IMG/VR virus record: IMGVR_UViG_3300036944_001289
Location: 62,001 to 126,000 of that record
Direction: 5' to 3' (one strand)
DNA: 64,000 nt
This document shows positions 43,454 to 53,608 of this stretch, in pieces (the first letter of the stretch is position 1; the number at the start of each line of letters is the position of its first letter). The notes beneath the pieces are model-generated. The model was given only the letters and a program-made list of their open reading frames with translations. It ran no database searches and was not told the DNA's origin. A program made the position numbers and the translations under genes.

Positions 43454-44776
43454 TCAACTACTTAGAATTTGAAGTGCTCTTGCGTTATCACTTAAATCAC
43501 CACCGCTCTCTAAACTGTCGTCTTCATATATAGTGAGGGTTTTATAATCAATACGCAGTGTAGTTGTACCGTAATTTGGACCAAATCTATTTTTCGCTAT
43601 ATTCATTCTAGTTATATTAAGTTCTCGATCTTCGTCAGATTGTGTTATTATCCCTATAAAATCAGCAGTCGCAGCTAAACCTATACTCTCACTTATACTC
43701 TCTAATCCAGGTTTATCGGTATCATAGCCTGAACGATTCAACTGTGTGGCTGTAATTATAGGGCAATTAAAGATATAACTTAATGCTCTAACTTGTTCAG
43801 TAACAATCTTTACACGTTCGTATGAATTATCACCTGTAGGACCTTTTAGTAGATTAATATAATCCAATACTATTGCATCTATATGTACACCAGTACTTTG
43901 TATATTTTTTAGGTAACCTTGTAATTGCGAGGGTGTAATAGTACTAGGCGGAAACTCTTTTATTACAAGTTTACTAGTAGGGTTATCTTTAGTGTGTTCA
44001 AGTATTTGAGTCTTTAATGTTTGAGATTCAACCTTGAGTTCTGATATAGGTATCTTACTAACACTGGATGCTAATCTCTTAGCATATACTAACTCACTCA
44101 TTTCAAGAGTTATCAGTAATACGGTCTTACCATTATTTGCGATATTAGTTGCAAAATTACCCAAGAATATACTCTTACCAACGTTTGTTTCACCAGCAAA
44201 AATATAAATTGCTCTTCCGTTCTTCAACCAGCCACCACCTAGCTTTCTATCTAAGAATTTATAACCCGTAGGTATTACAGGTTGTTCTGTATTCAGATCA
44301 TCTATTAGAATATTAATATCTTTGAATAGATCTAAACCTATATTTGTTTTTAAGTTTACATTACAGCTCTTTTCAAACTTATCTAAGATGAAACCTGTAT
44401 CTATTTTGCCATTCGAAACGTCCTTAGAGATATCGAGCATTGTATGCCATATAGAACGCTCCTTAATATATCTTTCTGTATTCTCAATAAGTTCGTCATT
44501 GTTAAATGACTTATCCATCTCAGAAAACTTATTAACTACAGTCTTAAATGCTTCTCTTGAATCTGAATCAATGAGATATGTCTTTAGTTCTGTAATTGTA
44601 GGTGGTACATTTCTCTTGTTATAAAAATCTTTAATGATAGTATATATAGTTTTTATATTCTTATCCTTAAAGTGTGCAGGGTTAACCGCACTTATAACAG
44701 TAGAAAGATACTTCTCATCTGTAAGAGATTTGTAAATTAAAATCTGTTCGAAAAAATCTAAATTGATTTTCTGCAT
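43454..44776 (-). CDS. gp41: Replicative DnaB-like helicase
   Basis: AGETNVGKS, ITLEMSE, IKEFPP, VLDYINL, TATQLNRSG, SESIGL, KNRFG. Confidence 0.95.
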   Translation of the reverse strand: MQKINLDFFEQILIYKSLTDEKYLSTVISAVNPAHFKDKNIKTIYTIIKDFYNKRNVPPTITELKTYLIDSDSREAFKTVVNKFSEMDKSFNNDELIENTERYIKERSIWHTMLDISKDVSNGKIDTGFILDKFEKSCNVNLKTNIGLDLFKDINILIDDLNTEQPVIPTGYKFLDRKLGGGWLKNGRAIYIFAGETNVGKSIFLGNFATNIANNGKTVLLITLEMSELVYAKRLASSVSKIPISELKVESQTLKTQILEHTKDNPTSKLVIKEFPPSTITPSQLQGYLKNIQSTGVHIDAIVLDYINLLKGPTGDNSYERVKIVTEQVRALSYIFNCPIITATQLNRSGYDTDKPGLESISESIGLAATADFIGIITQSDEDRELNITRMNIAKNRFGPNYGTTTLRIDYKTLTIYEDDSLESGGDLSDNARALQILSS

Positions 44777-44788
44777 TAGTTTATGATA

Positions 44789-45505
44789 TTATACTGTTAA
44801 TAATTTACCAGTGTAAGCTTTGTATTTTTCTTTGAAGTACTTCTCTCCGGCTCTCCACTCTTCGGTAAACTCTCTGAGGCCTGGTGATTGATGTATTACT
44901 GGTAAATCGATTACACCTGTCTTGAGCTTTTTGATAGCAGCATCCATACTAAAGATGAGATCATAATAGTGAAATCTAGCTGGATTTTTTTCATCGAATC
45001 TCAAATCTCCAAGTTTTTTGAGATTAACACCAATAAACAAACCATCTATAAGAAGTGCTTGCTTATTTAGTGGTCCAAAAGATGTATACATATAATCATC
45101 TGGGGATCCATGACCAACACAACCAAGATGATCTTTTCTTTCTGACATAAGATGCCATAGCATAGGATTGTTATGATATCCGAAATTTGCTACTTTTGAT
45201 CCAGCTAGACCAATAACATCAAACTGTTCGAAACCTTTATAAATACGTTCAAGAAAATCTAAGCAATTTACAAATATATCATCATGCATAAAAATAGCAT
45301 GTGTATAACACTCTTTGAATGTCTCGACATAATTTATATGTCTATTATAAACAGATGCCAAACTTTCATTGTTCTGATATACCCATGAAATATGATGTCC
45401 AAATAGCCCATAAAAAATACTAGGTAAATTCTTTTCTAAACATTCACCTAAAATAGTATCACTTCTATCTTTATGTTTTGTTGCTACTACAAATTTTATA
45501 TTCAT
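44789..45505 (-). CDS. GT-A fold glycosyltransferase-like protein
   Basis: LASVYN, IFMHDD, VIGLAG, LIDGLFIG, FHYYD, VIHQSPG. Confidence 0.75.
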   Translation of the reverse strand: MNIKFVVATKHKDRSDTILGECLEKNLPSIFYGLFGHHISWVYQNNESLASVYNRHINYVETFKECYTHAIFMHDDIFVNCLDFLERIYKGFEQFDVIGLAGSKVANFGYHNNPMLWHLMSERKDHLGCVGHGSPDDYMYTSFGPLNKQALLIDGLFIGVNLKKLGDLRFDEKNPARFHYYDLIFSMDAAIKKLKTGVIDLPVIHQSPGLREFTEEWRAGEKYFKEKYKAYTGKLLTV

Positions 45506-45975
45506 TTTAAAATATGATTAAACTTACATTCAAACTCACAATCTTCACCACCAAATTCATTATACTTTCTACTAAACGGTTCACCTACTAATTTTTTATA
45601 AAACGCTATTCCTTCTACTGAATTTGAGTTAACATAAAAAGTACCACACCAAAGCTGACTGTCCTGCAGAGCTCGTTTCGTAAGCATTTTAGCTATACCT
45701 TGACCTTTAAACTTTTCATCTGTTACGATATAATAAGTTTTTAATGTGCAATTAGCTTTTGTATTACAAGTAAACGCGTGTAAACCTACTATTATATCAG
45801 TAGCTTCATAAAAAGCTACTAATATTGGAAATTCCTTCCACCACCCTCTTGTTTCCCATAAGTAACCAAAAGTATTCATAACAAAAGAGTCTGTGTTATT
45901 ATACATAAACTCCATTAGTTTATACTTTTGGTCTTGTGTATTAGGTGTTATATATTCAAGTCTAAATTTTGTCAT
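45502..45975 (-). CDS. GNAT-family acetyltransferase
   Basis: IVTDEKFKGQGIAKML (motif A) and N...IAFYKK (motif B). Confidence 0.8.
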   Translation of the reverse strand: MTKFRLEYITPNTQDQKYKLMEFMYNNTDSFVMNTFGYLWETRGWWKEFPILVAFYEATDIIVGLHAFTCNTKANCTLKTYYIVTDEKFKGQGIAKMLTKRALQDSQLWCGTFYVNSNSVEGIAFYKKLVGEPFSRKYNEFGGEDCEFECKFNHILK

Positions 45976-46634
45976 AGCTCTAGAAAAGGGGACTTACACT
46001 CAAAGCCACCAACTGGTTTGATACCTTTTTTAGTCATCCTATATAAGATACCTTCTTCTATTTTTTTAAACCCTTCTCCTGGTATAGAGGAAAAACTATT
46101 ATGATCATAGAATAGTGTACTACCTTGCCTTGCAAGGTATACATTTAGTGTTTTAATATTCATTATCCATAAACCAAATGTTCCTTGTAACATACTTAGT
46201 ACATATTCGATATTGAGTATTTCATTTGAAATAGTTGTGCATTTATCAAATCTATTTTCAAAAAGATCTAGTAATGCTGGTATTATACTAGTATCTACTA
46301 AATTATCGTGATCAGGTATATTCTCGTCTTTTAATTGCTTAAAGTTAGTTAACACCCCATTATGAGCGACGATCCAATTATTTTTTTCAAAAGGGTGACA
46401 ATTATGTAATTTCCATTTTCGCTCAAATGAAGTAGGTGCTTGATTGTGCCCTAAATATAGGAAGCCTTCTGGTAGTTTTATCGTATTCCAATCAAAACTA
46501 CCTTCTGTCTTTTGTATATCGTATGATTCACCATTAGTATAACATACTCCAGAAGCAAAATTCCCACGTTGCTTATTCGCCTCATCTAAAATTTCAAATT
46601 TATTCGTATTAAACGATCCAAATATGCCGCAAAT
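45972..46634 (-). CDS. Class II (Ntn) glutamine amidotransferase with non-canonical ATT start (220 aa)
   Basis: The frame extends 93 codons upstream of the ORF-track start to ATT-TGC-GGC-ATA-TTT-GGA = (M)CGIFG; RG, GH.QAPT, HPF, AHNG, VDT motifs; an in-frame TAG lies 4 codons upstream. Confidence 0.85.
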   Translation of the reverse strand: MCGIFGSFNTNKFEILDEANKQRGNFASGVCYTNGESYDIQKTEGSFDWNTIKLPEGFLYLGHNQAPTSFERKWKLHNCHPFEKNNWIVAHNGVLTNFKQLKDENIPDHDNLVDTSIIPALLDLFENRFDKCTTISNEILNIEYVLSMLQGTFGLWIMNIKTLNVYLARQGSTLFYDHNSFSSIPGEGFKKIEEGILYRMTKKGIKPVGGFECKSPFLEL

Positions 46635-46638
46635 ATAG

Positions 46639-46668
46639 TTACCCTACCTTCCTTGTTAGATTAAACAT
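46639..46668 (-). other. Putative 9-codon leaderless uORF (MFNLTRKVG*)
   Basis: TTGAAA-N16-TATCAT-N5-ATG; stop lies 4 nt before the ATT start; contains AAGGAAGG. Confidence 0.45.
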
Positions 46669-46715
46669 ACTGAATGATATTAACTTATTTTTGGTTTTCA
46701 AGATTAAATAATAAT

Positions 46716-48539
46716 ATGAGTTTTACAAAATTAGGATGGGCTAACAAAGCAATTATAGGTTACAGTTTCTTACTCGAACAAGATGAAGAAATAAAACAAT
46801 CTACACCACCCGCACCGAGTGCTGAACTTTCACAGGATGCTATTATTGGTCCTATGTTAAAATTCATTCATCAAAAAATGTTGGCGTATATTAAGAAATC
46901 TCAAGAAGAAGGTAAGGCTGCTAAACTTACACCTTATAGAGATCGCTCTATTTATTTTTTACAATTTATTAAAGATAATTTCCCCGAGCTTGTTAATAAT
47001 AAATTAGCAGAGATTGAAAAAAAGAAGCCAAGAGAGAAGAGAGAGGGTGCACAAGACGTCACACCTATTGATGCTGAAGGTATTGTTCAAAAGAAGCGCA
47101 TTCCTTCTGCTACAGAAATTAACTGGTGGTTTGGAAATACTTTAAGAAGTTTACCAAATGGTAGAGAAGTTTATGATAAAGTAAAAAACGAGCTGATTGC
47201 AAAAACAGATAATAAATCAATACAGGACTATATTAACGTTACCGCAACCACGCGCGGTGAAAGATTTAAAATAGATGCTGGTTCTTTCTTACCTACTTCA
47301 GATATAACAACGGCTCTTGCTACACCTTTATCTGCATTTAAATCACCTGAAGAGAGATTCGAACAACAAATAACTGATGAGCCTCGTGTTAGTTTAGAGG
47401 AGATTAAGGATTTTCTTATACAAGCACTCGTAGCGTTTAAAGAAGATGAAAAAGGTGATCCGTATATTAGTGATGAAGTTAATGATGTAATATCTGGCGT
47501 ATATGGAAATGAAACTGCAGAAGATTTAGAAGGATATGTGACAAGTAAAGCTCGTAAATATAATAAATTAGCTCAACGTGGAGGTGACGCAGGTGCGAAA
47601 AAGTTGTATGAAATATTAAGCGATATTATCGAAAATTTCACACACTTTAAGCTCTTTGGTGTTTTAAGAACAACACCTGAAACATCGGATATTGCACTGG
47701 GTTCAATACAAGATATTAAGGATGATGTTGTTTATGGTATTGAAGACTTTAAAGAAAATAATGAAGAGTTTGCTGCAAGTTTTGATAAAATGATTGCAAA
47801 AATCGAAAATATGGATACAATATCTGAAATATTGACATATTTGGAAGGTCGTATAGAAGTATTACCTACACACAGTAACCCTACCATTCAAAGATTTGCA
47901 AAGAAGCTCGAAAGTATATACAATTCAATAAAAAATAAGATATCTACCGCTAAAAAGTTAAAAAGTGATGAATTGAGTGCTGTTGTATCACCTAGTAGTG
48001 AAATTAAATCAAAGGTAGAATTATCTACACCGTCTGAAGAAGATGTTGCGAATTCTTGGAAGAAGAACGAAGCTTTCGTGACTAATCTATTTAATATATT
48101 GAGGACATCAGGTGGTTCTTACCAAGCAGCAAAGTCAAAGATAGCCGATATGTCTAGTGACCGCACTAAACCTAAGAGAAATGAAAGAGGTGAGGTTGAG
48201 CTTGACGATAATGGCAATCCTATTGAAGTACCTGTAAAGAAAAACAAAATAGCTGTTGAGATGTTAGCTTGGTTAAATAATATCTCTTCAAAAATTGATG
48301 ATGCTGGTAGTATAATCACGAATCTATTTACCCGCTCGTATAATGAACAGGAGTTTTACGAAAACGGTAGTTCTCCTGAAAGATGGATTACCTATAGCAA
48401 ATTTGATACAGGTAGCGGCGACTATATCAATACCGAATCTGTAAAAATTACACCTAAACAGGTAAATAACCTTCTCGTTGAGAACTATCGCAATAGTATC
48501 AGAAAGAAGGTTATTGCTCAGCAAAGATATCTATATTAA
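46716..48539 (+). CDS. Large helical late protein (607 aa), candidate head-internal/ejected protein
   Basis: TAAATA-N5-ATG; N-terminal ...SFLLEQDEE; antisense insertion between queC and the GATase gene. Confidence 0.7.
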   Translation: MSFTKLGWANKAIIGYSFLLEQDEEIKQSTPPAPSAELSQDAIIGPMLKFIHQKMLAYIKKSQEEGKAAKLTPYRDRSIYFLQFIKDNFPELVNNKLAEIEKKKPREKREGAQDVTPIDAEGIVQKKRIPSATEINWWFGNTLRSLPNGREVYDKVKNELIAKTDNKSIQDYINVTATTRGERFKIDAGSFLPTSDITTALATPLSAFKSPEERFEQQITDEPRVSLEEIKDFLIQALVAFKEDEKGDPYISDEVNDVISGVYGNETAEDLEGYVTSKARKYNKLAQRGGDAGAKKLYEILSDIIENFTHFKLFGVLRTTPETSDIALGSIQDIKDDVVYGIEDFKENNEEFAASFDKMIAKIENMDTISEILTYLEGRIEVLPTHSNPTIQRFAKKLESIYNSIKNKISTAKKLKSDELSAVVSPSSEIKSKVELSTPSEEDVANSWKKNEAFVTNLFNILRTSGGSYQAAKSKIADMSSDRTKPKRNERGEVELDDNGNPIEVPVKKNKIAVEMLAWLNNISSKIDDAGSIITNLFTRSYNEQEFYENGSSPERWITYSKFDTGSGDYINTESVKITPKQVNNLLVENYRNSIRKKVIAQQRYLY

Positions 48540-49288
48540 TTTATATAAGGTATATCTCTACAACCTTTTTGTTTATAGACCTCATCAAGTCGTTCTTGTT
48601 GAACGTATTTGATGGGGTCTTTATATTTGGCTTCAATAAAACCTCTAAGTCTTAGACTACTCGAAGGTGTATCAGCATCGGCTAATTTATCTTCTCTATT
48701 CGAGTAGCAGGTCCAAGTCTTACTAAAATCCACACCGAGTCTAATACCTTCTTCAATGATTGATTTCTTACTCATCTCAATGAGAGGAGCTTCAATCTTT
48801 ATCTTTGATTTACGGTTTAGTGATATAAGATTATTAACTGAATTAATAAATTCCCCGCTACCATCCCAGTAGCCAGCTAGTGAGTCCGCTTCAGCAGCAC
48901 CATACCAAACAGTATCTGCACCTACGGACTCTGCATATGCAGAACATATAGATAAGAACATCAGATTTCTAAATGGAACGTATGATACGGGTTGAGCATC
49001 TCCTGCCATTTTCTTAACATTTGGATTATCAATATTAAGATTAGTAAGTGATGAAACTGGTGCGATATCTTTTATATACCTAACATCAAGTACTTTATTG
49101 GTAATTGTTACAGTATAAACATCTTGTAACATATTAGTATGGTGAGGTACGCACTCAAGTTCTCTAGAGTGTCTCTGACCATAATCAAAAGTTATAGTAT
49201 GTATTTCATTAAATCCCTGTGCTACTGCCATATACAGTAGCACTGTTGAATCTGCACCTCCACTAACTGTTAATACTAATTTACTCAT
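48536..49288 (-). CDS. queC: QueC-family (7-cyano-7-deazaguanine synthase-like) protein, divergent
   Basis: SGGADS, FDYGQRH..E, YVPFRN, APL...K..I, TWTCY; the CxxCxxC motif is absent. Confidence 0.85.
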   Translation of the reverse strand: MSKLVLTVSGGADSTVLLYMAVAQGFNEIHTITFDYGQRHSRELECVPHHTNMLQDVYTVTITNKVLDVRYIKDIAPVSSLTNLNIDNPNVKKMAGDAQPVSYVPFRNLMFLSICSAYAESVGADTVWYGAAEADSLAGYWDGSGEFINSVNNLISLNRKSKIKIEAPLIEMSKKSIIEEGIRLGVDFSKTWTCYSNREDKLADADTPSSSLRLRGFIEAKYKDPIKYVQQERLDEVYKQKGCRDIPYIN

Positions 49289-49297
49289 TTTATTAGA

Positions 49298-50410
49298 TTA
49301 CTTTTGTTCCGGTTCATCACCATCTTCAACCTCTGAAGGTACTTCAGTTTGTAGTTGTGAACCGTAAGACCACGCAATCTTCATTTTCTCTTCCATGCCA
49401 GGTAAGATAATCTTATTCCAGATGTCTTCATCTTTACCCCACTTAGAGAAGTATCCAAGCTTAGTACCATCAAGTAGCGAGTAAGTTGGTCCAGATTGGT
49501 TTATTACACCAAGCCCAACAGCTAATTCTACAAGCCCGTAGTATCTATCTAAACCAGTAGAGAATGACAAGAACATTTCACCTTCAAGATATTGCTTGAT
49601 AAATCTATTCTTTACTGTGAGAGCTCTCAGAATTACACCAGAATAGTTCTTTTGACCAGGTGCAAGCTTTGCATTTTCATTCTTACCGTCATCCTTTTGA
49701 GGTTTTCTTGCAAGCTGAATAGTTACTGATGGAAGATAGACTACTGATCGACCACCTGGCATATTCTTTTCTAGTGATGGATACATTGCCATTGGGTCAT
49801 CATAGACGTGATTGGTCATTACAATGGTCGTTTGGGTCATTGCACCAAGATTAGTACAAGTCTGCATTAGTGTTTTCATTGCACGTGCTTTGGTACCGGT
49901 ATCTTGAGATGTGCTTTCTTTTTCCATTCTGTTTATATCCATCTCAGACTGTAGATTGCCAAGGGAATCTATAACAATAAAGAATTTGCCATGCATTTTA
50001 GCTTCTCTTACGGAATTTAAGAACTTATAGATTGCATTTCTGGTTTGTTCAATCGTAATACAAGGTACGTATTTTACCTTTGAGATATCGAGACCTAGAC
50101 GTTGTGCACCTTCTGGGTCAATAGCGTTTTCTGTATCAAAAATAACAACCGTCATACCTTTTTTCTGTGCATTTGCAGCCATCTGCTGCACGAAAAAGGA
50201 TTTACCAGACATTGAAGGTCCAGCTAAAACTGTTACTCTTCCCTTTGGAATACCACCGTGTACTGAGCCGGATACAATCGCATTCAATACATAACTACCA
50301 GTGTCGATATACTCTTTTACTGTACTTAACGTATTATCATTAAGATAAGTTGCGAACGGATTGACACTATTAATCGATTCTAATACTTTTGAAATTTCTT
50401 TGTCTATCAT
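49298..50410 (-). CDS. uvsX: RecA-like recombinase
   Basis: DTGSYVLN, GPSMSGKS, FDTE, IDSLG, TNHVY, KNRF. Confidence 0.95.
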   Translation of the reverse strand: MIDKEISKVLESINSVNPFATYLNDNTLSTVKEYIDTGSYVLNAIVSGSVHGGIPKGRVTVLAGPSMSGKSFFVQQMAANAQKKGMTVVIFDTENAIDPEGAQRLGLDISKVKYVPCITIEQTRNAIYKFLNSVREAKMHGKFFIVIDSLGNLQSEMDINRMEKESTSQDTGTKARAMKTLMQTCTNLGAMTQTTIVMTNHVYDDPMAMYPSLEKNMPGGRSVVYLPSVTIQLARKPQKDDGKNENAKLAPGQKNYSGVILRALTVKNRFIKQYLEGEMFLSFSTGLDRYYGLVELAVGLGVINQSGPTYSLLDGTKLGYFSKWGKDEDIWNKIILPGMEEKMKIAWSYGSQLQTEVPSEVEDGDEPEQK

Positions 50411-51028: not shown

Positions 51029-53608
51029 TCAACTGAATAAATCAAATAAATTAGTTTGAACAATAGAACCTGGCCGTTGTAATTCCCATCTGACATTTTC
51101 ATATAGTCTTTCTACAGCTGCGAGTACAGTCTTTTCAAAGATTAATTCGTAGTCTGGCTGAAAGATCTGTTTAAATTCTTCAGGGTAGTAGTATTTATAA
51201 GCAATTTTTTCGATATTATATTTGTTAGGTGTCTGTAGTTGTAATAATCTAACTTTATCACCGGATGATATCTTTTCGTATTTGTTAGTTAACTGTAGCT
51301 TTTCAATAAGTCTATTATAAAATATTGCTGCTTTAATATGATGCGGTGTACCTTTGGCTATTTCGAAACCATTACTGAGTTGTTCTCTTGCTTCATAATT
51401 ATTTAGATTACTAACCGTTGCAATAGATTCGATCGGTAGTGTCTTAAATATCTCCCACACGTTATTAATTGATATATTCGTTTTAGAATAATCCTGAGTA
51501 GAGAGCATCGTTTCAATTATATCTTTAATATAAGGTTTAACAGCAGATGGTATTGTACTACGTACAACATCTACACCTACGTATTTGTATTTATTACAAG
51601 GTATTTCTTCAATATCTAAGACATGTATTATATATCTTTTCTTCTGTAAGAAGATACCGGTATCAGCTATTGCTTCTCTTTTAAATACAAACCTACTATC
51701 TTCTGAGAATAATTCACGTTCACCCCATACTTTTATTTCGTTATTGAGCATATCACCTAGCTCTTTTACTTTATCGTAAAACTCTTTACTAATCTTGCCA
51801 GGTTTGTTAGAAAATATTACACCGTTTTGTACAATATTATCTAAAGTAAGATAAATAGAATCTGTATCGCCATATACTACGATATCATTATTATCTTGCT
51901 CTGTTATATTTGGTACATTCTCTTTTACGAACTTTTTAGCAACCTCTCCTGCAAATTTAATTACTTCTTGACCGGTTAAGGTTACAGATGAGGCTATATC
52001 GTCGTCACCTAATGGATTGTTTTTGTTACCAAATGCACCATAAGTTGCATTAATATATATCTTTTGAGCCAATTGCTTAGAGTCTAATTGAACACTCTCG
52101 TTCTTTAGATTATTATACTCTTCGCATTCTGTTTGATTTAGTTCTTCTAATTCTTTAATACGAAGTTTTACTTTCTTAAGTTTAGCTTGCGTCTTTTTAC
52201 GCTCCTTGTAGTAATAATCTAATACCTCAGGAAATATACCACGCTTTTTCTGTGTGAATATAATATTTGCCTTACTTATAGTAAGTCTCTCCTTTTGTAT
52301 AAAAAGAGCAAACTTGTCTTCAGTAAGTGTAAATGTTTGACCTGTAACGTGTCGTATTACCACATTACCATCTTCTCGTTTAATTATTTTACCTATCTTT
52401 GTCTCTGGTGATGTATTTAGAGTAATCATCACATTAGGATATAGAGAGTTAGCGTCAAATGATACTATATGCTTTTTAAATCCAGGTAATGGTTCACGAA
52501 CAAACGCACCGGGGTTAACGCCACTCTCTACATTGCGTATAAATGTAGGCAGTATTTGATTCTTATGTTTAGCGCGTATTGCTGCTGCTCCATTTATAAC
52601 TGATATAGAACCCATTGCTGCTTCAAATGTAGTTAGTCCTATATATGCAAACATTCTCACTAGGTTTAAATATCTTAGTTTGAACTCAAGGTTCTTAAGT
52701 AGTCTTACGTCTTGAATATTGTACTCTACAAACTTCTGCCAATTTTCATTGTATAGATCTATTAGATTACCTGTACCAATATCTACCTTTGATTCACCTA
52801 GTTCTAATTTAGCAATACTGTTTAGCTTGTAACTCTCTTTTTCACCTGGTGAGAACCTCTTATATATGTCAAGATAATCTATAAGAGATACACCTTCTAT
52901 AAACCAGCGCTGCAAGTCTTGACCTTTATCGTTGTGTATTTCACGGAAGTACGTTTTACCTGCTGGTGATAAACTATTACGTGTATTATCACCAAAAAGG
53001 TTTTGTACCCTATTCATGATATATGGAATATCGAATCCCATACTATTCCATCCACTTACAATATCGGGTGGATCAGATTTAAACCAATCTATAAACTTAG
53101 TAAGTAATTCTACTTCATTTTTACAATATATAAAGTCTACATCACTATCGACTACATTAAAAGGTTTTTCGCCCCAGCATATAAATCTCTTTGTAGTTGA
53201 ATCATATATAGTAATGACATTGATAGGGTATTTCGAATATCTTGCGTCAGGAAACTCTTCTGCAATAACTTCAATGTCAATAAATACTACTCTTACATCA
53301 TTTTTACTAAAGTCGGGTGTTTCGTTATCTTTATAGAATCGCTCTATAAGAAACTGTTGAACACATGGAAAATTATCGAATACTCTTGTTATACCTGTAT
53401 TGGTGATAAAAGAGCTTCTGTCAAATTGAGTATTAAATATACGTTTAACTAGCTTAGTACCGAATATTGAATCATATTCACCAGGACCTTCTATATAGAG
53501 GTGGGGTTTATAGGTAAAATCTTGTACATTTCTTTTACCATTTTCATCCCACCCTAATATAGTTATCTTCTGTTCTTTGCTGTTATAAAAAGCGTTCCTA
53601 TAACTCAT
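51029..53608 (-). CDS. gp43: Family B DNA polymerase
   Basis: IDIE, GWNSMGFD, YNIQDV, SFDANSLYP, KIYINATYG, YGDTDS, KKRY. Confidence 0.97.
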   Translation of the reverse strand: MSYRNAFYNSKEQKITILGWDENGKRNVQDFTYKPHLYIEGPGEYDSIFGTKLVKRIFNTQFDRSSFITNTGITRVFDNFPCVQQFLIERFYKDNETPDFSKNDVRVVFIDIEVIAEEFPDARYSKYPINVITIYDSTTKRFICWGEKPFNVVDSDVDFIYCKNEVELLTKFIDWFKSDPPDIVSGWNSMGFDIPYIMNRVQNLFGDNTRNSLSPAGKTYFREIHNDKGQDLQRWFIEGVSLIDYLDIYKRFSPGEKESYKLNSIAKLELGESKVDIGTGNLIDLYNENWQKFVEYNIQDVRLLKNLEFKLRYLNLVRMFAYIGLTTFEAAMGSISVINGAAAIRAKHKNQILPTFIRNVESGVNPGAFVREPLPGFKKHIVSFDANSLYPNVMITLNTSPETKIGKIIKREDGNVVIRHVTGQTFTLTEDKFALFIQKERLTISKANIIFTQKKRGIFPEVLDYYYKERKKTQAKLKKVKLRIKELEELNQTECEEYNNLKNESVQLDSKQLAQKIYINATYGAFGNKNNPLGDDDIASSVTLTGQEVIKFAGEVAKKFVKENVPNITEQDNNDIVVYGDTDSIYLTLDNIVQNGVIFSNKPGKISKEFYDKVKELGDMLNNEIKVWGERELFSEDSRFVFKREAIADTGIFLQKKRYIIHVLDIEEIPCNKYKYVGVDVVRSTIPSAVKPYIKDIIETMLSTQDYSKTNISINNVWEIFKTLPIESIATVSNLNNYEAREQLSNGFEIAKGTPHHIKAAIFYNRLIEKLQLTNKYEKISSGDKVRLLQLQTPNKYNIEKIAYKYYYPEEFKQIFQPDYELIFEKTVLAAVERLYENVRWELQRPGSIVQTNLFDLFS

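What the first reader, a model, noticed from the sequence alone, without database searches (positions are those of the whole stretch)
44789..49288. Candidate new base/protein modification pathway: variant QueC + GATase + GNAT + glycosyltransferase in the replication core
Seen: queC follows uvsX. After one antisense late gene come a class II GATase, a GNAT and a GT-A protein chained by ATGA overlaps, directly before the gp41 helicase. Known: phage QueC and Gat-QueC enzymes make preQ0/G+ for 7-deazaguanine DNA modification, and other QueC-family members conjugate deazaguanine to proteins in defence systems. Inference: GATase supplies ammonia to QueC, and the GNAT/GT may add acetyl or sugar groups, giving an undescribed hypermodified base or modified protein. 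Caveat: folE, queD, queE and dpdA are not in this window, and adjacency alone does not prove a shared pathway.
Basis: partly seen in the sequence, partly recalled or inferred. Interest (0 to 1): 0.72.

Follow-up and report, generated by a model that had tools for sequence, protein, structure and literature searches.

The report
Phage deazaguanine DNA-modification genes, acetyl variant
These genes are one piece of a complete phage system that replaces guanine in its DNA with a 7-deazaguanine base, and in this phage an acetyltransferase sits where relatives carry the known formyl-adding enzyme, which predicts a DNA base not yet described.

Summary
On the minus strand the order is gp43, UvsX, QueC, one antisense ORF, class-II amidotransferase (Gat), GNAT, GT-A glycosyltransferase, gp41, with ATGA overlaps at Gat/GNAT and GNAT/GT.

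The 209-kb genome also encodes FolE2, QueD, QueE, a two-domain QueF and a DpdA3 DNA transglycosylase. DpdA3-kinase-QueF has the same order as in Flavobacterium phage immuto_2-6A, whose DNA carries formyl-preQ1.

QueC and Gat match the two halves of the phage 9g Gat-QueC fusion. The same split pair lies side by side in unrelated Vibrio phages.

In 82 related loci the glycosyltransferase is always present. The slot after Gat holds this GNAT in 61 loci and a DpdN formyltransferase (41.5% identical to immuto's) in 15, never both.

Best reading:
- Gat and QueC make preQ0 using glutamine nitrogen.
- QueF reduces it to preQ1.
- DpdA3 inserts it into DNA.
- The GNAT acetylates the aminomethyl group, giving a predicted N-acetyl-preQ1.

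The glycosyltransferase's acceptor is unknown, and nothing supports protein modification. This is a new variant of a known kind, and none of it has been tested biochemically.

The parts
49298..50410 (-). UvsX recombinase, the upstream flank of the island
   Evidence: PF00154 RecA E 5e-22. It precedes QueC in 66 of 66 related loci.
48536..49288 (-). QueC, 7-cyano-7-deazaguanine (preQ0) synthase. This is a variant without the CxxCxxC Zn motif and with a lineage-specific C-terminal tail.
   Evidence: PF06508 E 1.4e-51. TIGR00364 scores 153.2 bits against a cut-off of 150.3. The PP-loop SGGADS is present. Against B. subtilis QueC (3BL5), the three distal cysteines align to a gap, T and S. In the family alignment they align to D, T/S and S, and they are kept only in L103 and in the Vibrio phages. 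hhalign to residues 254-467 of 9g Gat-QueC gives 99.3%.
46674..48539 (+). Antisense ORF of 621 aa, function unknown, variable in length and position
   Evidence: No Pfam match; one marginal PHROG hit to a family of unknown function; no usable Atlas match. Homologues of 170-621 aa occur in 50 of 66 related loci. In L100 the antisense ORF lies between Gat and GT instead. No TATAAATA lies upstream.
45972..46634 (-). Stand-alone class-II (Ntn) glutamine amidotransferase (Gat) with an ATT start codon; the proposed ammonia-supplying partner of QueC
   Evidence: PF13522 E 1.5e-5. It matches GlmS and PurF from residue 1. Cys1, Arg22-Gly23, His-Asn-Gly 90-92 and Asp113 are invariant. hhalign to residues 1-217 of 9g Gat-QueC gives 85%, E 6e-6, and to VH7D gp015 gives 94.6%. 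The ATT start is preceded by AAGGAAGG.
45502..45975 (-). GNAT acetyltransferase, ATGA-coupled to Gat; the proposed preQ1 N-acetyltransferase and functional analogue of DpdN
   Evidence: PF13508 and PF00583. The model has pLDDT 93.4 and resembles amine N-acetyltransferases. The Q/R-G-x-G-I-A motif is conserved. The same slot holds a DpdN formyltransferase in 15 related loci.
44789..45505 (-). GT-A fold glycosyltransferase (PF13712), ATGA-coupled to the GNAT; acceptor unknown
   Evidence: PF13712 E 3e-9. The model has pLDDT 93.6 and a GT-A fold. The H-D-D (DxD-type) motif is conserved. Present in 82 of 82 related loci. No homologue in 50,697 GenBank phage records.
43454..44776 (-). gp41 replicative helicase, the downstream flank of the island
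   Evidence: PF03796 DnaB_C E 6e-29.

Best explanation
The stretch is one of three dispersed parts of a complete DpdA3-type 7-deazaguanine DNA-modification system in an uncultured T4-like phage. The proposed steps are below; each is marked as shown or inferred.
1. FolE2, QueD and QueE, encoded just outside the window, turn GTP into 7-carboxy-7-deazaguanine. Gene content is shown; activity is inferred from family membership.
2. QueC and the stand-alone class-II amidotransferase act as a split Gat-QueC. The amidotransferase releases ammonia from glutamine, and QueC uses it to turn the carboxylate into the amide and then the nitrile (preQ0). Homology and recurrent adjacency are shown; binding and the nitrogen source are inferred.
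3. The two-domain QueF reduces preQ0 to preQ1. Catalytic residues are shown; a Vibrio phage VH7D QueF has been tested by others.
4. DpdA3 exchanges guanine in phage DNA for the deazaguanine base. Orthology to immuto_2-6A DpdA is shown; activity is inferred.
5. The GNAT acetylates the aminomethyl nitrogen of preQ1, as free base or once in DNA. The product would be 7-(acetylamino)methyl-7-deazaguanine, the acetyl counterpart of the known formyl base fdPreQ1. This is inferred from slot replacement by DpdN.
6. The GT-A glycosyltransferase is a fixed member of the island, but its acceptor is not known.

The likely purpose is protection of phage DNA from host nucleases.
For: The pathway is complete in one genome:
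- FolE2: PF02649 E 1e-69; NF010200 268.8 bits against a cut-off of 215.
- QueD.
- QueE: phrog_2076 E 3e-44.
- QueC.
- QueF, with the ESKSIKLY motif, Cys/Asp and HFHEE intact.
- DpdA3: E 2.4e-72 to immuto_2-6A DpdA; hhalign 99% to phiST CGPG_00065. The only PDB sequence hit is the DNA-guanine transglycosylase 7UI4, at E 0.19.

DpdA3-kinase-QueF has the same order as in immuto_2-6A. According to PMC10516641, that phage's guanines are fully replaced by fdPreQ1.

DpdA3 and QueF recur in both near-complete relatives that carry the island.

Gat and QueC match the two halves of the 9g fusion. They are neighbours in three Vibrio phages in other genomic contexts.

GNAT and DpdN:
- 61 loci have the GNAT, 15 have DpdN (PF00551; 41.5% identical to YP_010114479.1) and 6 have neither. 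Whichever gene is present is ATGA-coupled to the Gat stop.
- The two (near-)complete GNAT genomes examined beyond this one, and this genome itself, have no DpdN anywhere. DpdN records have no GNAT in the parts recovered.
- On a gp41 tree our GNAT clade is sister to the DpdN clade.

There is no ThyA or hydroxymethylase gene that could provide another DNA target.
Against: - No chemistry was measured. The base in the DNA is unknown.
- The GNAT/DpdN swap maps to a single event on the tree, so it is one observation, not a repeated pattern.
- One clade has neither enzyme.
- This GNAT family is found only in this lineage, and its fold is generic.
- The complex prediction for QueC with Gat gave no verdict.
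- In this phage the two genes are 2 kb apart, with an antisense gene between them.
- QueC has lost its Zn site, so its chemistry may differ from canonical QueC.
- Hutinet et al. could not show DpdA3 activity in E. coli (PMC10516641).
- The ATT start could mean weak expression of Gat.
Confidence: 0.55

Rival explanations
1. The GNAT and the glycosyltransferase have nothing to do with deazaguanine. They form a sugar or envelope/protein-modifying module, for example amino-sugar acetylation and transfer, that happens to be fixed in the replication gene cluster of this lineage. Only QueC and Gat serve the base pathway.
For: - Relatives carry nucleotide-sugar genes beside the GT: a cytidylyltransferase, a cupin, and GDP-mannose-dehydratase-like epimerases.
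- The GT's structural neighbours act on polysaccharides and small molecules.
- Neither gene has a homologue near other phage deazaguanine clusters.
- All genes of this module keep their position within the lineage, so position alone is weak evidence.
Against: - The slot just after Gat is filled by DpdN in the sister clade, with the same ATGA coupling. GNAT and DpdN never co-occur.
- The genes lie in one tight operon with early replication genes.
- No hydroxymethyl-pyrimidine route exists as another DNA target.
Confidence: 0.3
2. Gat and QueC together make the amidine base G+ (archaeosine base), as the fused Gat-QueC of phage 9g does, and the DNA carries dG+.
For: Gat and QueC are homologous to the two domains of 9g Gat-QueC. 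That enzyme together with DpdA gives dG+ in E. coli (PMC6884629).
Against: - The genome keeps a QueF with all catalytic residues, which makes preQ1 from preQ0.
- The sister clade has DpdN, which needs the preQ1 amine.
Confidence: 0.1
3. The Que genes are auxiliary metabolic genes. They raise the preQ1 supply so that the host TGT can queuosine-modify host tRNAs and the phage's own tRNAs; DNA is not the target.
For: The phage encodes about 27 tRNAs, including His-GTG, Asn-GTT, Asp-GTC and Tyr-GTA, the four queuosine-accepting species. Que genes in aquatic phages are often annotated this way.
Against: - A DpdA3 DNA transglycosylase orthologue sits two genes from QueF, in the same order as in a phage with fully modified DNA.
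- DpdN is present in the sister clade.
- No bacterial-type TGT was found (PF01702); QueA and QueG were not searched for.
- The two uses are not mutually exclusive.
Confidence: 0.07
4. QueC here is a QatC/Cap9-like enzyme that attaches a deazaguanine to a protein.
For: QueC has an altered C-terminus. QueC-family enzymes of this kind are known in defence systems (established knowledge, not tested here).
Against: - QueC reaches the TIGR00364 equivalog cut-off.
- In PADLOC it matches only the dpd 'QueC' model.
- No TGT-like or QatB-like partner lies next to it.
- The full free-base pathway and DpdA3 are present.
Confidence: 0.02

Closest known systems
[quoted passage not shown]
   Same: - DpdA3 is orthologous (E 2.4e-72), as are QueF (E 1.5e-73) and the small kinase (E 4e-21).
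- The order DpdA3-kinase-QueF is the same.
- QueD and QueE are homologous.
- The sister clade of our phage carries a DpdN 41.5% identical to immuto's.
   Different: - Our phage has no DpdN. A GNAT sits in the slot that DpdN occupies in the sister clade.
- It uses FolE2 instead of FolE.
- It adds a stand-alone amidotransferase and a GT-A glycosyltransferase.
- Its genes are spread over three loci in a T4-like genome, whereas immuto is not T4-like (DNA polymerase A).
- Its QueC lacks the Zn motif.
Gat-QueC of Enterobacteria phage 9g and Crenarchaeota (class-II amidotransferase fused to QueC; gives G+)
   Same: The two domain families are the same. Gat matches residues 1-217 and QueC matches residues 254-467 of the 9g protein.
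   Different: - Here they are two separate genes, with QueC first, 2 kb apart and with an antisense ORF between them.
- QueF and an acyltransferase are present, so the end product is expected to derive from preQ1, not G+.
- 9g QueC keeps the CxxCxxC motif.
QueC plus 'nucleophile aminohydrolase' pairs of Vibrio phages (Schizotequatrovirus VH7D and 1.081.O; giant phage 2.275.O)
   Same: A stand-alone Gat homologue of about 200 aa lies immediately after QueC, together with QueF and FolE. The papers read here do not mention this Gat.
   Different: - The Schizotequatrovirus members (1.081.O, VH7D) use DpdA2; VH7D also has the DpdM methylase and the group shows very low modification levels (PMC10516641). 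No DpdA is annotated in the 2.275.O stretch shown.
- Their QueC keeps the Zn cysteines.
- They have no GNAT and no GT.
DpdN, the proposed preQ1/dPreQ1 formyltransferase (PF00551)
   Same: The operon slot is the same, as is the coupling to Gat. The expected acceptor, the aminomethyl group of preQ1, is the same, and both transfer an acyl group.
   Different: The protein superfamily differs (GNAT versus PurN-like) and so does the donor (acetyl-CoA versus a formyl-folate). The GNAT is an analogue, not a member.

Membership tests
Phage 7-deazaguanine DNA-modification system (DpdA type) | Genes for preQ0 synthesis from GTP (FolE or FolE2, QueD, QueE, QueC) | tested here: met
   FolE2; QueD; QueE; QueC. 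All lie in one 209-kb record.
Phage 7-deazaguanine DNA-modification system (DpdA type) | A DpdA-family DNA-guanine transglycosylase | tested here: met
   A 287-aa ORF at genome 159722-160585. phmmer E 2.4e-72 to immuto_2-6A DpdA. hhalign 99% to phiST DpdA3. phrog_19058 E 2e-57. PF01702 and DUF6610 were negative, as expected for the divergent DpdA3 group. No structure model was made.
Phage 7-deazaguanine DNA-modification system (DpdA type) | A 7-deazaguanine derivative present in virion DNA | not testable with these tools
   Only assembled contigs of the source runs are held, with no raw signal and no mass spectrometry.
Gat-QueC | An active class-II amidotransferase domain (N-terminal Cys, Arg, Asn-Gly, Asp) | tested here: met
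   C1, R22-G23, H90-N91-G92 and D113 are invariant in 15 and 22 sequences.
Gat-QueC | Amidotransferase and QueC fused in one polypeptide | tested here: not met
   They are separate genes, at 45972-46634 and 48536-49288, with an antisense ORF between them. They are adjacent but still separate in L031-L034 and L037.
QueC (TIGR00364 / PF06508) | PP-loop SGGxDS and a family score above the curated cut-off | tested here: met
   SGGADS is present. PF06508 scores 175.5 bits. TIGR00364 scores 153.2 bits against 150.3.
QueC (TIGR00364 / PF06508) | C-terminal four-cysteine Zn site | tested here: not met
   Only the first Cys (TCY) is kept. The CxxCxxC cysteines align to D, T and S in the family alignment.
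DpdN (preQ1 formyltransferase) | PF00551 formyltransferase fold | tested here: not met
   The protein in our slot is a GNAT, and no DpdN homologue exists anywhere in the genome. It shares DpdN's position and probably its acceptor, not its family.
GNAT acetyltransferases | GNAT fold with an acetyl-CoA-binding motif | tested here: met
   PF13508 scores 28.3 bits against 27. The model has pLDDT 93.4, with TM about 0.7-0.8 to solved GNATs. The Q/R-G-x-G-I-A motif is conserved.
GT-A glycosyltransferases (PF13712) | GT-A fold with a DxD-type metal/nucleotide-sugar motif | tested here: met
   PF13712 scores 37.2 bits against 27. The model has pLDDT 93.6. The best matches are the majastridin-UDP complex and StrF. 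H74-D75-D76 are conserved.
QatC/Cap9-type protein deazaguanylation | A QueC-like enzyme encoded with its defence-system partners | tested here: not met
   The PADLOC scan of QueC, Gat, GNAT, GT, the antisense ORF and DpdA3 gave only the dpd 'QueC' model.

The most novel reading that the evidence does not exclude
The DNA of this widespread aquatic phage lineage carries a doubly elaborated 7-deazaguanine. The base would be acylated (acetyl or formyl, depending on the clade) and also glycosylated by the conserved GT-A enzyme. The sugars would differ between relatives according to the nucleotide-sugar cassettes next to the GT. That would be the first glycosylated purine analogue found in DNA.
Probability: 0.1. 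Interest if true: 0.9.

Novelty: new variant of a known kind. Interest (0 to 1): 0.64.

Why it matters
Eight 7-deazaguanine derivatives are known in phage DNA, and each new one came with a new enzyme. Here a concrete, testable ninth is predicted: N-acetyl-preQ1, made by a GNAT that replaces the known formyltransferase.

The lineage is common. At least 319 IMG/VR contigs carry the island, from freshwater, shale-gas and ocean samples.

The analysis also points to a stand-alone glutamine amidotransferase as a recurrent partner of QueC. The papers read here do not mention it. A role is proposed for it.

It shows a QueC family that works, or works differently, without its Zn site.

Modified guanines of this kind block restriction enzymes. 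They can also bias sequencing and the recovery of viromes.

Tried and rejected
- **Complex prediction of QueC with Gat.** Score 0.20 against a mark of 0.32, so no verdict. It is not used for or against binding.
- **DNA-level search against GenBank phages.** No match for the region.
- **tblastn of GT and GNAT against 50,697 phage records.** No match.
- **Searches of the genome for PF01702 (TGT), PF20314 (DUF6610/DpdA4), PF01227 (FolE), PF04055 (radical SAM) and Vibrio DpdA2.** All negative. DpdA3, FolE2 and QueE were then found by other queries, so these blanks reflect divergence, not absence.
- **PF18909 (MazZ-like) in the genome.** No match, but the control did not ring either, so this is uninformative.
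- **MazZ-like gene of relatives against phiST CGPG_00068.** No similarity.
- **hmC or hmU route as an alternative target for the GT.** Rejected, because no PF00303 gene is present.
- **Fold searches for the GT and the GNAT.** They confirm the folds but give no acceptor. A TET-associated DNA glycosyltransferase appears only at rank 30.
- **Atlas searches.** They added nothing beyond the family names.
- **Sequencing runs.** Only contigs are held, so no read-level signal of modification could be sought, and read laying was not used.
- **Rfam scan of the window.** No hits.
- **Literature searches for an acetylated or glycosylated deazaguanine in DNA.** Nothing found.
- **Structure prediction.** It was unavailable twice. 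When it opened, the two jobs went to the GT and the GNAT, so no DpdA3 model was made.

Full report
**What is in the sequence.** The window is bases 62001-126000 of a 209,282-bp IMG/VR virus record with direct terminal repeats, estimated 100% complete. It is a T4-like phage of about 31% G+C. Its DNA polymerase is only about 30% identical to that of any named phage.

The gene order on the minus strand is as follows:
- gp43: 51029-53608
- two small ORFs
- UvsX: 49298-50410
- QueC: 48536-49288
- a 621-aa ORF on the plus strand: 46674-48539
- a class-II glutamine amidotransferase (Gat): 45972-46634
- a GNAT: 45502-45975
- a GT-A glycosyltransferase: 44789-45505
- the gp41 helicase: 43454-44776

The ATGA overlaps at Gat/GNAT and GNAT/GT, and the short gaps at UvsX/QueC and GT/gp41, can be read in the sequence.

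1. The amidotransferase has no standard start codon. Its catalytic Cys is preceded by ATT, with AAGGAAGG 12 nt upstream. ORF callers therefore report only a 127-aa fragment. The 88%-identical relative has ATG at exactly that position. ATT occurs in 6 of 82 related loci, in four separate sequence contexts, each with a good ribosome-binding site. I read it as real AUU initiation, not as a broken gene.

2. QueC is a true variant. It has the PP-loop and just reaches the TIGR00364 equivalog cut-off (153.2 against 150.3 bits). However, the CxxCxxC part of the Zn site is replaced by D, T/S and S across the lineage. The motif survives only in the deepest relative (L103) and in Vibrio phage QueCs. A conserved C-terminal tail has also been added.

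3. The antisense ORF matches nothing and has no TATAAATA upstream. Its length varies from 170 to 621 aa. It is absent from 16 of 66 loci, and in L100 it sits between Gat and GT. 'Late gene' is not supported.

**The rest of the pathway is in the genome.** They lie elsewhere in the same record, at these genome coordinates:
- FolE2: 129065-130060 (PF02649 E 1e-69; NF010200 above cut-off).
- QueD: 132837-133469, and QueE: 134560-135330.
- DpdA3: 159722-160585; a small kinase: 160582-161151; a two-domain QueF: 161154-162074.

PF01702 missed DpdA3. It is nevertheless clear by four measures:
- E 3.5e-9 to Cellulophaga phage phiST CGPG_00065.
- hhalign 99% over nearly the full length.
- E 2.4e-72 to the annotated DpdA of Flavobacterium phage immuto_2-6A.
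- The only PDB sequence hit of its profile is the bacterial DNA-guanine transglycosylase 7UI4, at a weak E of 0.19.

QueF keeps the ESKSIKLY motif, the Cys/Asp pair and HFHEE. The order DpdA3-kinase-QueF is the same as in immuto_2-6A. That phage's DNA has all G replaced by 7-(formylamino)methyl-7-deazaguanine (PMC10516641). Both near-complete relatives that carry the island also carry DpdA3 next to QueF.

**QueC and the amidotransferase.**
- The Gat profile aligns with residues 1-217 of the fused Gat-QueC of phage 9g (85%, E 6e-6), and QueC aligns with residues 254-467 (99.3%).
- Homologous stand-alone amidotransferases lie directly after QueC in Vibrio phages 1.081.O, 2.275.O and VH7D, in different genomic contexts. 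The two Hutinet papers read here do not mention them.
- Cys1, Arg-Gly, His-Asn-Gly and Asp of the Ntn amidotransferase active site are invariant.
- A class-II amidotransferase combined with a PP-loop ATPase is also the architecture of asparagine synthetase B (established knowledge).

I infer a split, glutamine-dependent preQ0 synthase. [quoted passage not shown] Our genome also keeps QueF. I therefore favour ammonia supply to QueC over G+ formation. The complex prediction gave no verdict.

**Conservation.** At least 319 IMG/VR contigs encode a Gat relative, and 314 protein clusters match it. I examined 82 loci with Gat identity from 100% down to 42%.
- QueC is present in 66 of 66 loci that reach UvsX.
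- The GT is present in 82 of 82 loci that reach gp41.
- The GNAT is present in 61.
- A MazZ-like dGTP diphosphohydrolase domain gene is present in 56, but not in our phage.
- Cytidylyltransferase, cupin or GDP-mannose-dehydratase-like genes are present in a minority.

All this is one lineage, so fixed position alone does not prove shared function.

**The GNAT slot.** Among the loci without the GNAT, 15 have a gene of 173-183 aa at the same place, also overlapping the Gat stop by ATGA.
- It is a PF00551 formyltransferase.
- It is 41.5% identical over 97% of its length to immuto_2-6A YP_010114479.1 (E about 1e-36 to 1e-40). That protein is the one Hutinet et al. named DpdN, the proposed preQ1 formyltransferase.
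- Among 50,697 phage records, the Immutovirus DpdN genes are the only strong hits.
- This genome (100% complete) and the two relatives with the GNAT (88% and 100% complete) have no DpdN anywhere. DpdN records have no GNAT in what is covered.
- On a gp41 tree the DpdN loci form one clade (100/100) that is sister to our GNAT clade (99/94). The six loci with neither enzyme form another clade.

The exchange therefore happened once. This limits its weight, but it is an in-place replacement of one acyltransferase by another.

The GNAT model (pLDDT 93.4) resembles primary-amine N-acetyltransferases such as SpeG and RimI, and it keeps the acetyl-CoA motif. I conclude, as an inference, that the GNAT acetylates the aminomethyl nitrogen of preQ1. 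The predicted base is 7-(acetylamino)methyl-7-deazaguanine. No paper in the held library describes such a base.

**The glycosyltransferase.**
- The model (pLDDT 93.6) is a GT-A fold with a conserved H-D-D motif.
- Its neighbours are the majastridin-UDP complex, StrF, WbbL, RmlT and FKRP. A TET-associated DNA glycosyltransferase appears only at rank 30.
- It has no homologue in GenBank phages.
- There is no ThyA-type hydroxymethylase in the genome, so the T-even style hmC target is absent.
- In the deepest clade Gat and GT are directly adjacent.
- Its place in an operon with early replication genes fits a DNA-directed role. The variable nucleotide-sugar cassettes beside it resemble an arms-race pattern. 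Neither point is proof.

I leave its acceptor open.

**Rivals.**
- A tRNA-queuosine role is suggested by about 27 phage tRNA genes, including the four GUN-anticodon species. It does not explain DpdA3 and DpdN. It may coexist with the DNA role.
- G+ formation is weakened by the presence of QueF and the acyltransferases.
- Protein deazaguanylation has no support.

**Origin.** Two shale-gas metagenome runs hold the whole stretch. Weaker matches come from lake and freshwater runs. Relatives also occur in Tara Oceans assemblies and in other unclassified assemblies. Only contigs are held, so no read-level trace of modification could be sought.

**Verdict.** This is a new variant of the known DpdA3-type deazaguanine DNA-modification systems. 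What is new:
- a split amidotransferase/QueC pair, with a QueC that lacks the Zn site;
- a GNAT in the DpdN slot, which predicts an undescribed acetylated base;
- a conserved glycosyltransferase of unknown target.

Noticed in passing
window 46632-46634 (minus strand); L035, L045, L048, L051: The amidotransferase starts with ATT directly before its catalytic Cys. This is true in 6 of 82 loci, in four separate sequence contexts, each with a strong ribosome-binding site. The other 76 loci have ATG. Gene callers extend or truncate these ORFs (for example P0052, and the 127-aa GTG ORF here).
   Followed up: partly
genome 160582-161151 (outside the window; L011:16582-17151): A small AAA_28 / thymidylate-kinase-like gene lies between DpdA3 and QueF, overlapping the DpdA3 stop. 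Its homologue holds the same place in Flavobacterium phage immuto_2-6A (E 4e-21), which also has a phosphoribosyltransferase in the cluster. A nucleotide-level step in DpdA3 systems may have been overlooked.
   Followed up: partly
L020:9135-9482, and 56 of 82 related loci: Most relatives, but not this phage, carry a gene of about 115 aa with the PF18909 domain (dATP/dGTP diphosphohydrolase, MazZ-like) between the acyltransferase and the GT. Its role in a guanine-replacement system is unexplained.
   Followed up: partly
genome about 37.4-45.0 kb and 195.7-198.9 kb (L007, L008, L013): About 27 tRNA genes are present. They include His-GTG, Asn-GTT, Asp-GTC and Tyr-GTA, the four species that normally receive queuosine.
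   Followed up: no
window 46674-48539 (+); L100:4677-5519 (-): The charged antisense ORF varies from 170 to 621 aa between relatives and is absent in 16 of 66 loci. In one clade an antisense ORF lies between Gat and GT instead of between QueC and Gat. It behaves like a fast-evolving or mobile insert in the operon.
   Followed up: partly
L042-L044 (about 4161-4592 in L042); L098 and L100: In some relatives QueD lies between UvsX and QueC. In others a cytidylyltransferase-like gene lies there. The island accepts Que and sugar-nucleotide genes at several points.
   Followed up: no
L023:9442-11323; L058: Two GDP-mannose-dehydratase/epimerase-like genes are inserted between the MazZ-like gene and the GT in a few relatives. 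This suggests that the sugar donor differs between lineages.
   Followed up: no
genome 133676-134476 (-): A PhoH-like gene sits between QueD and QueE.
   Followed up: no
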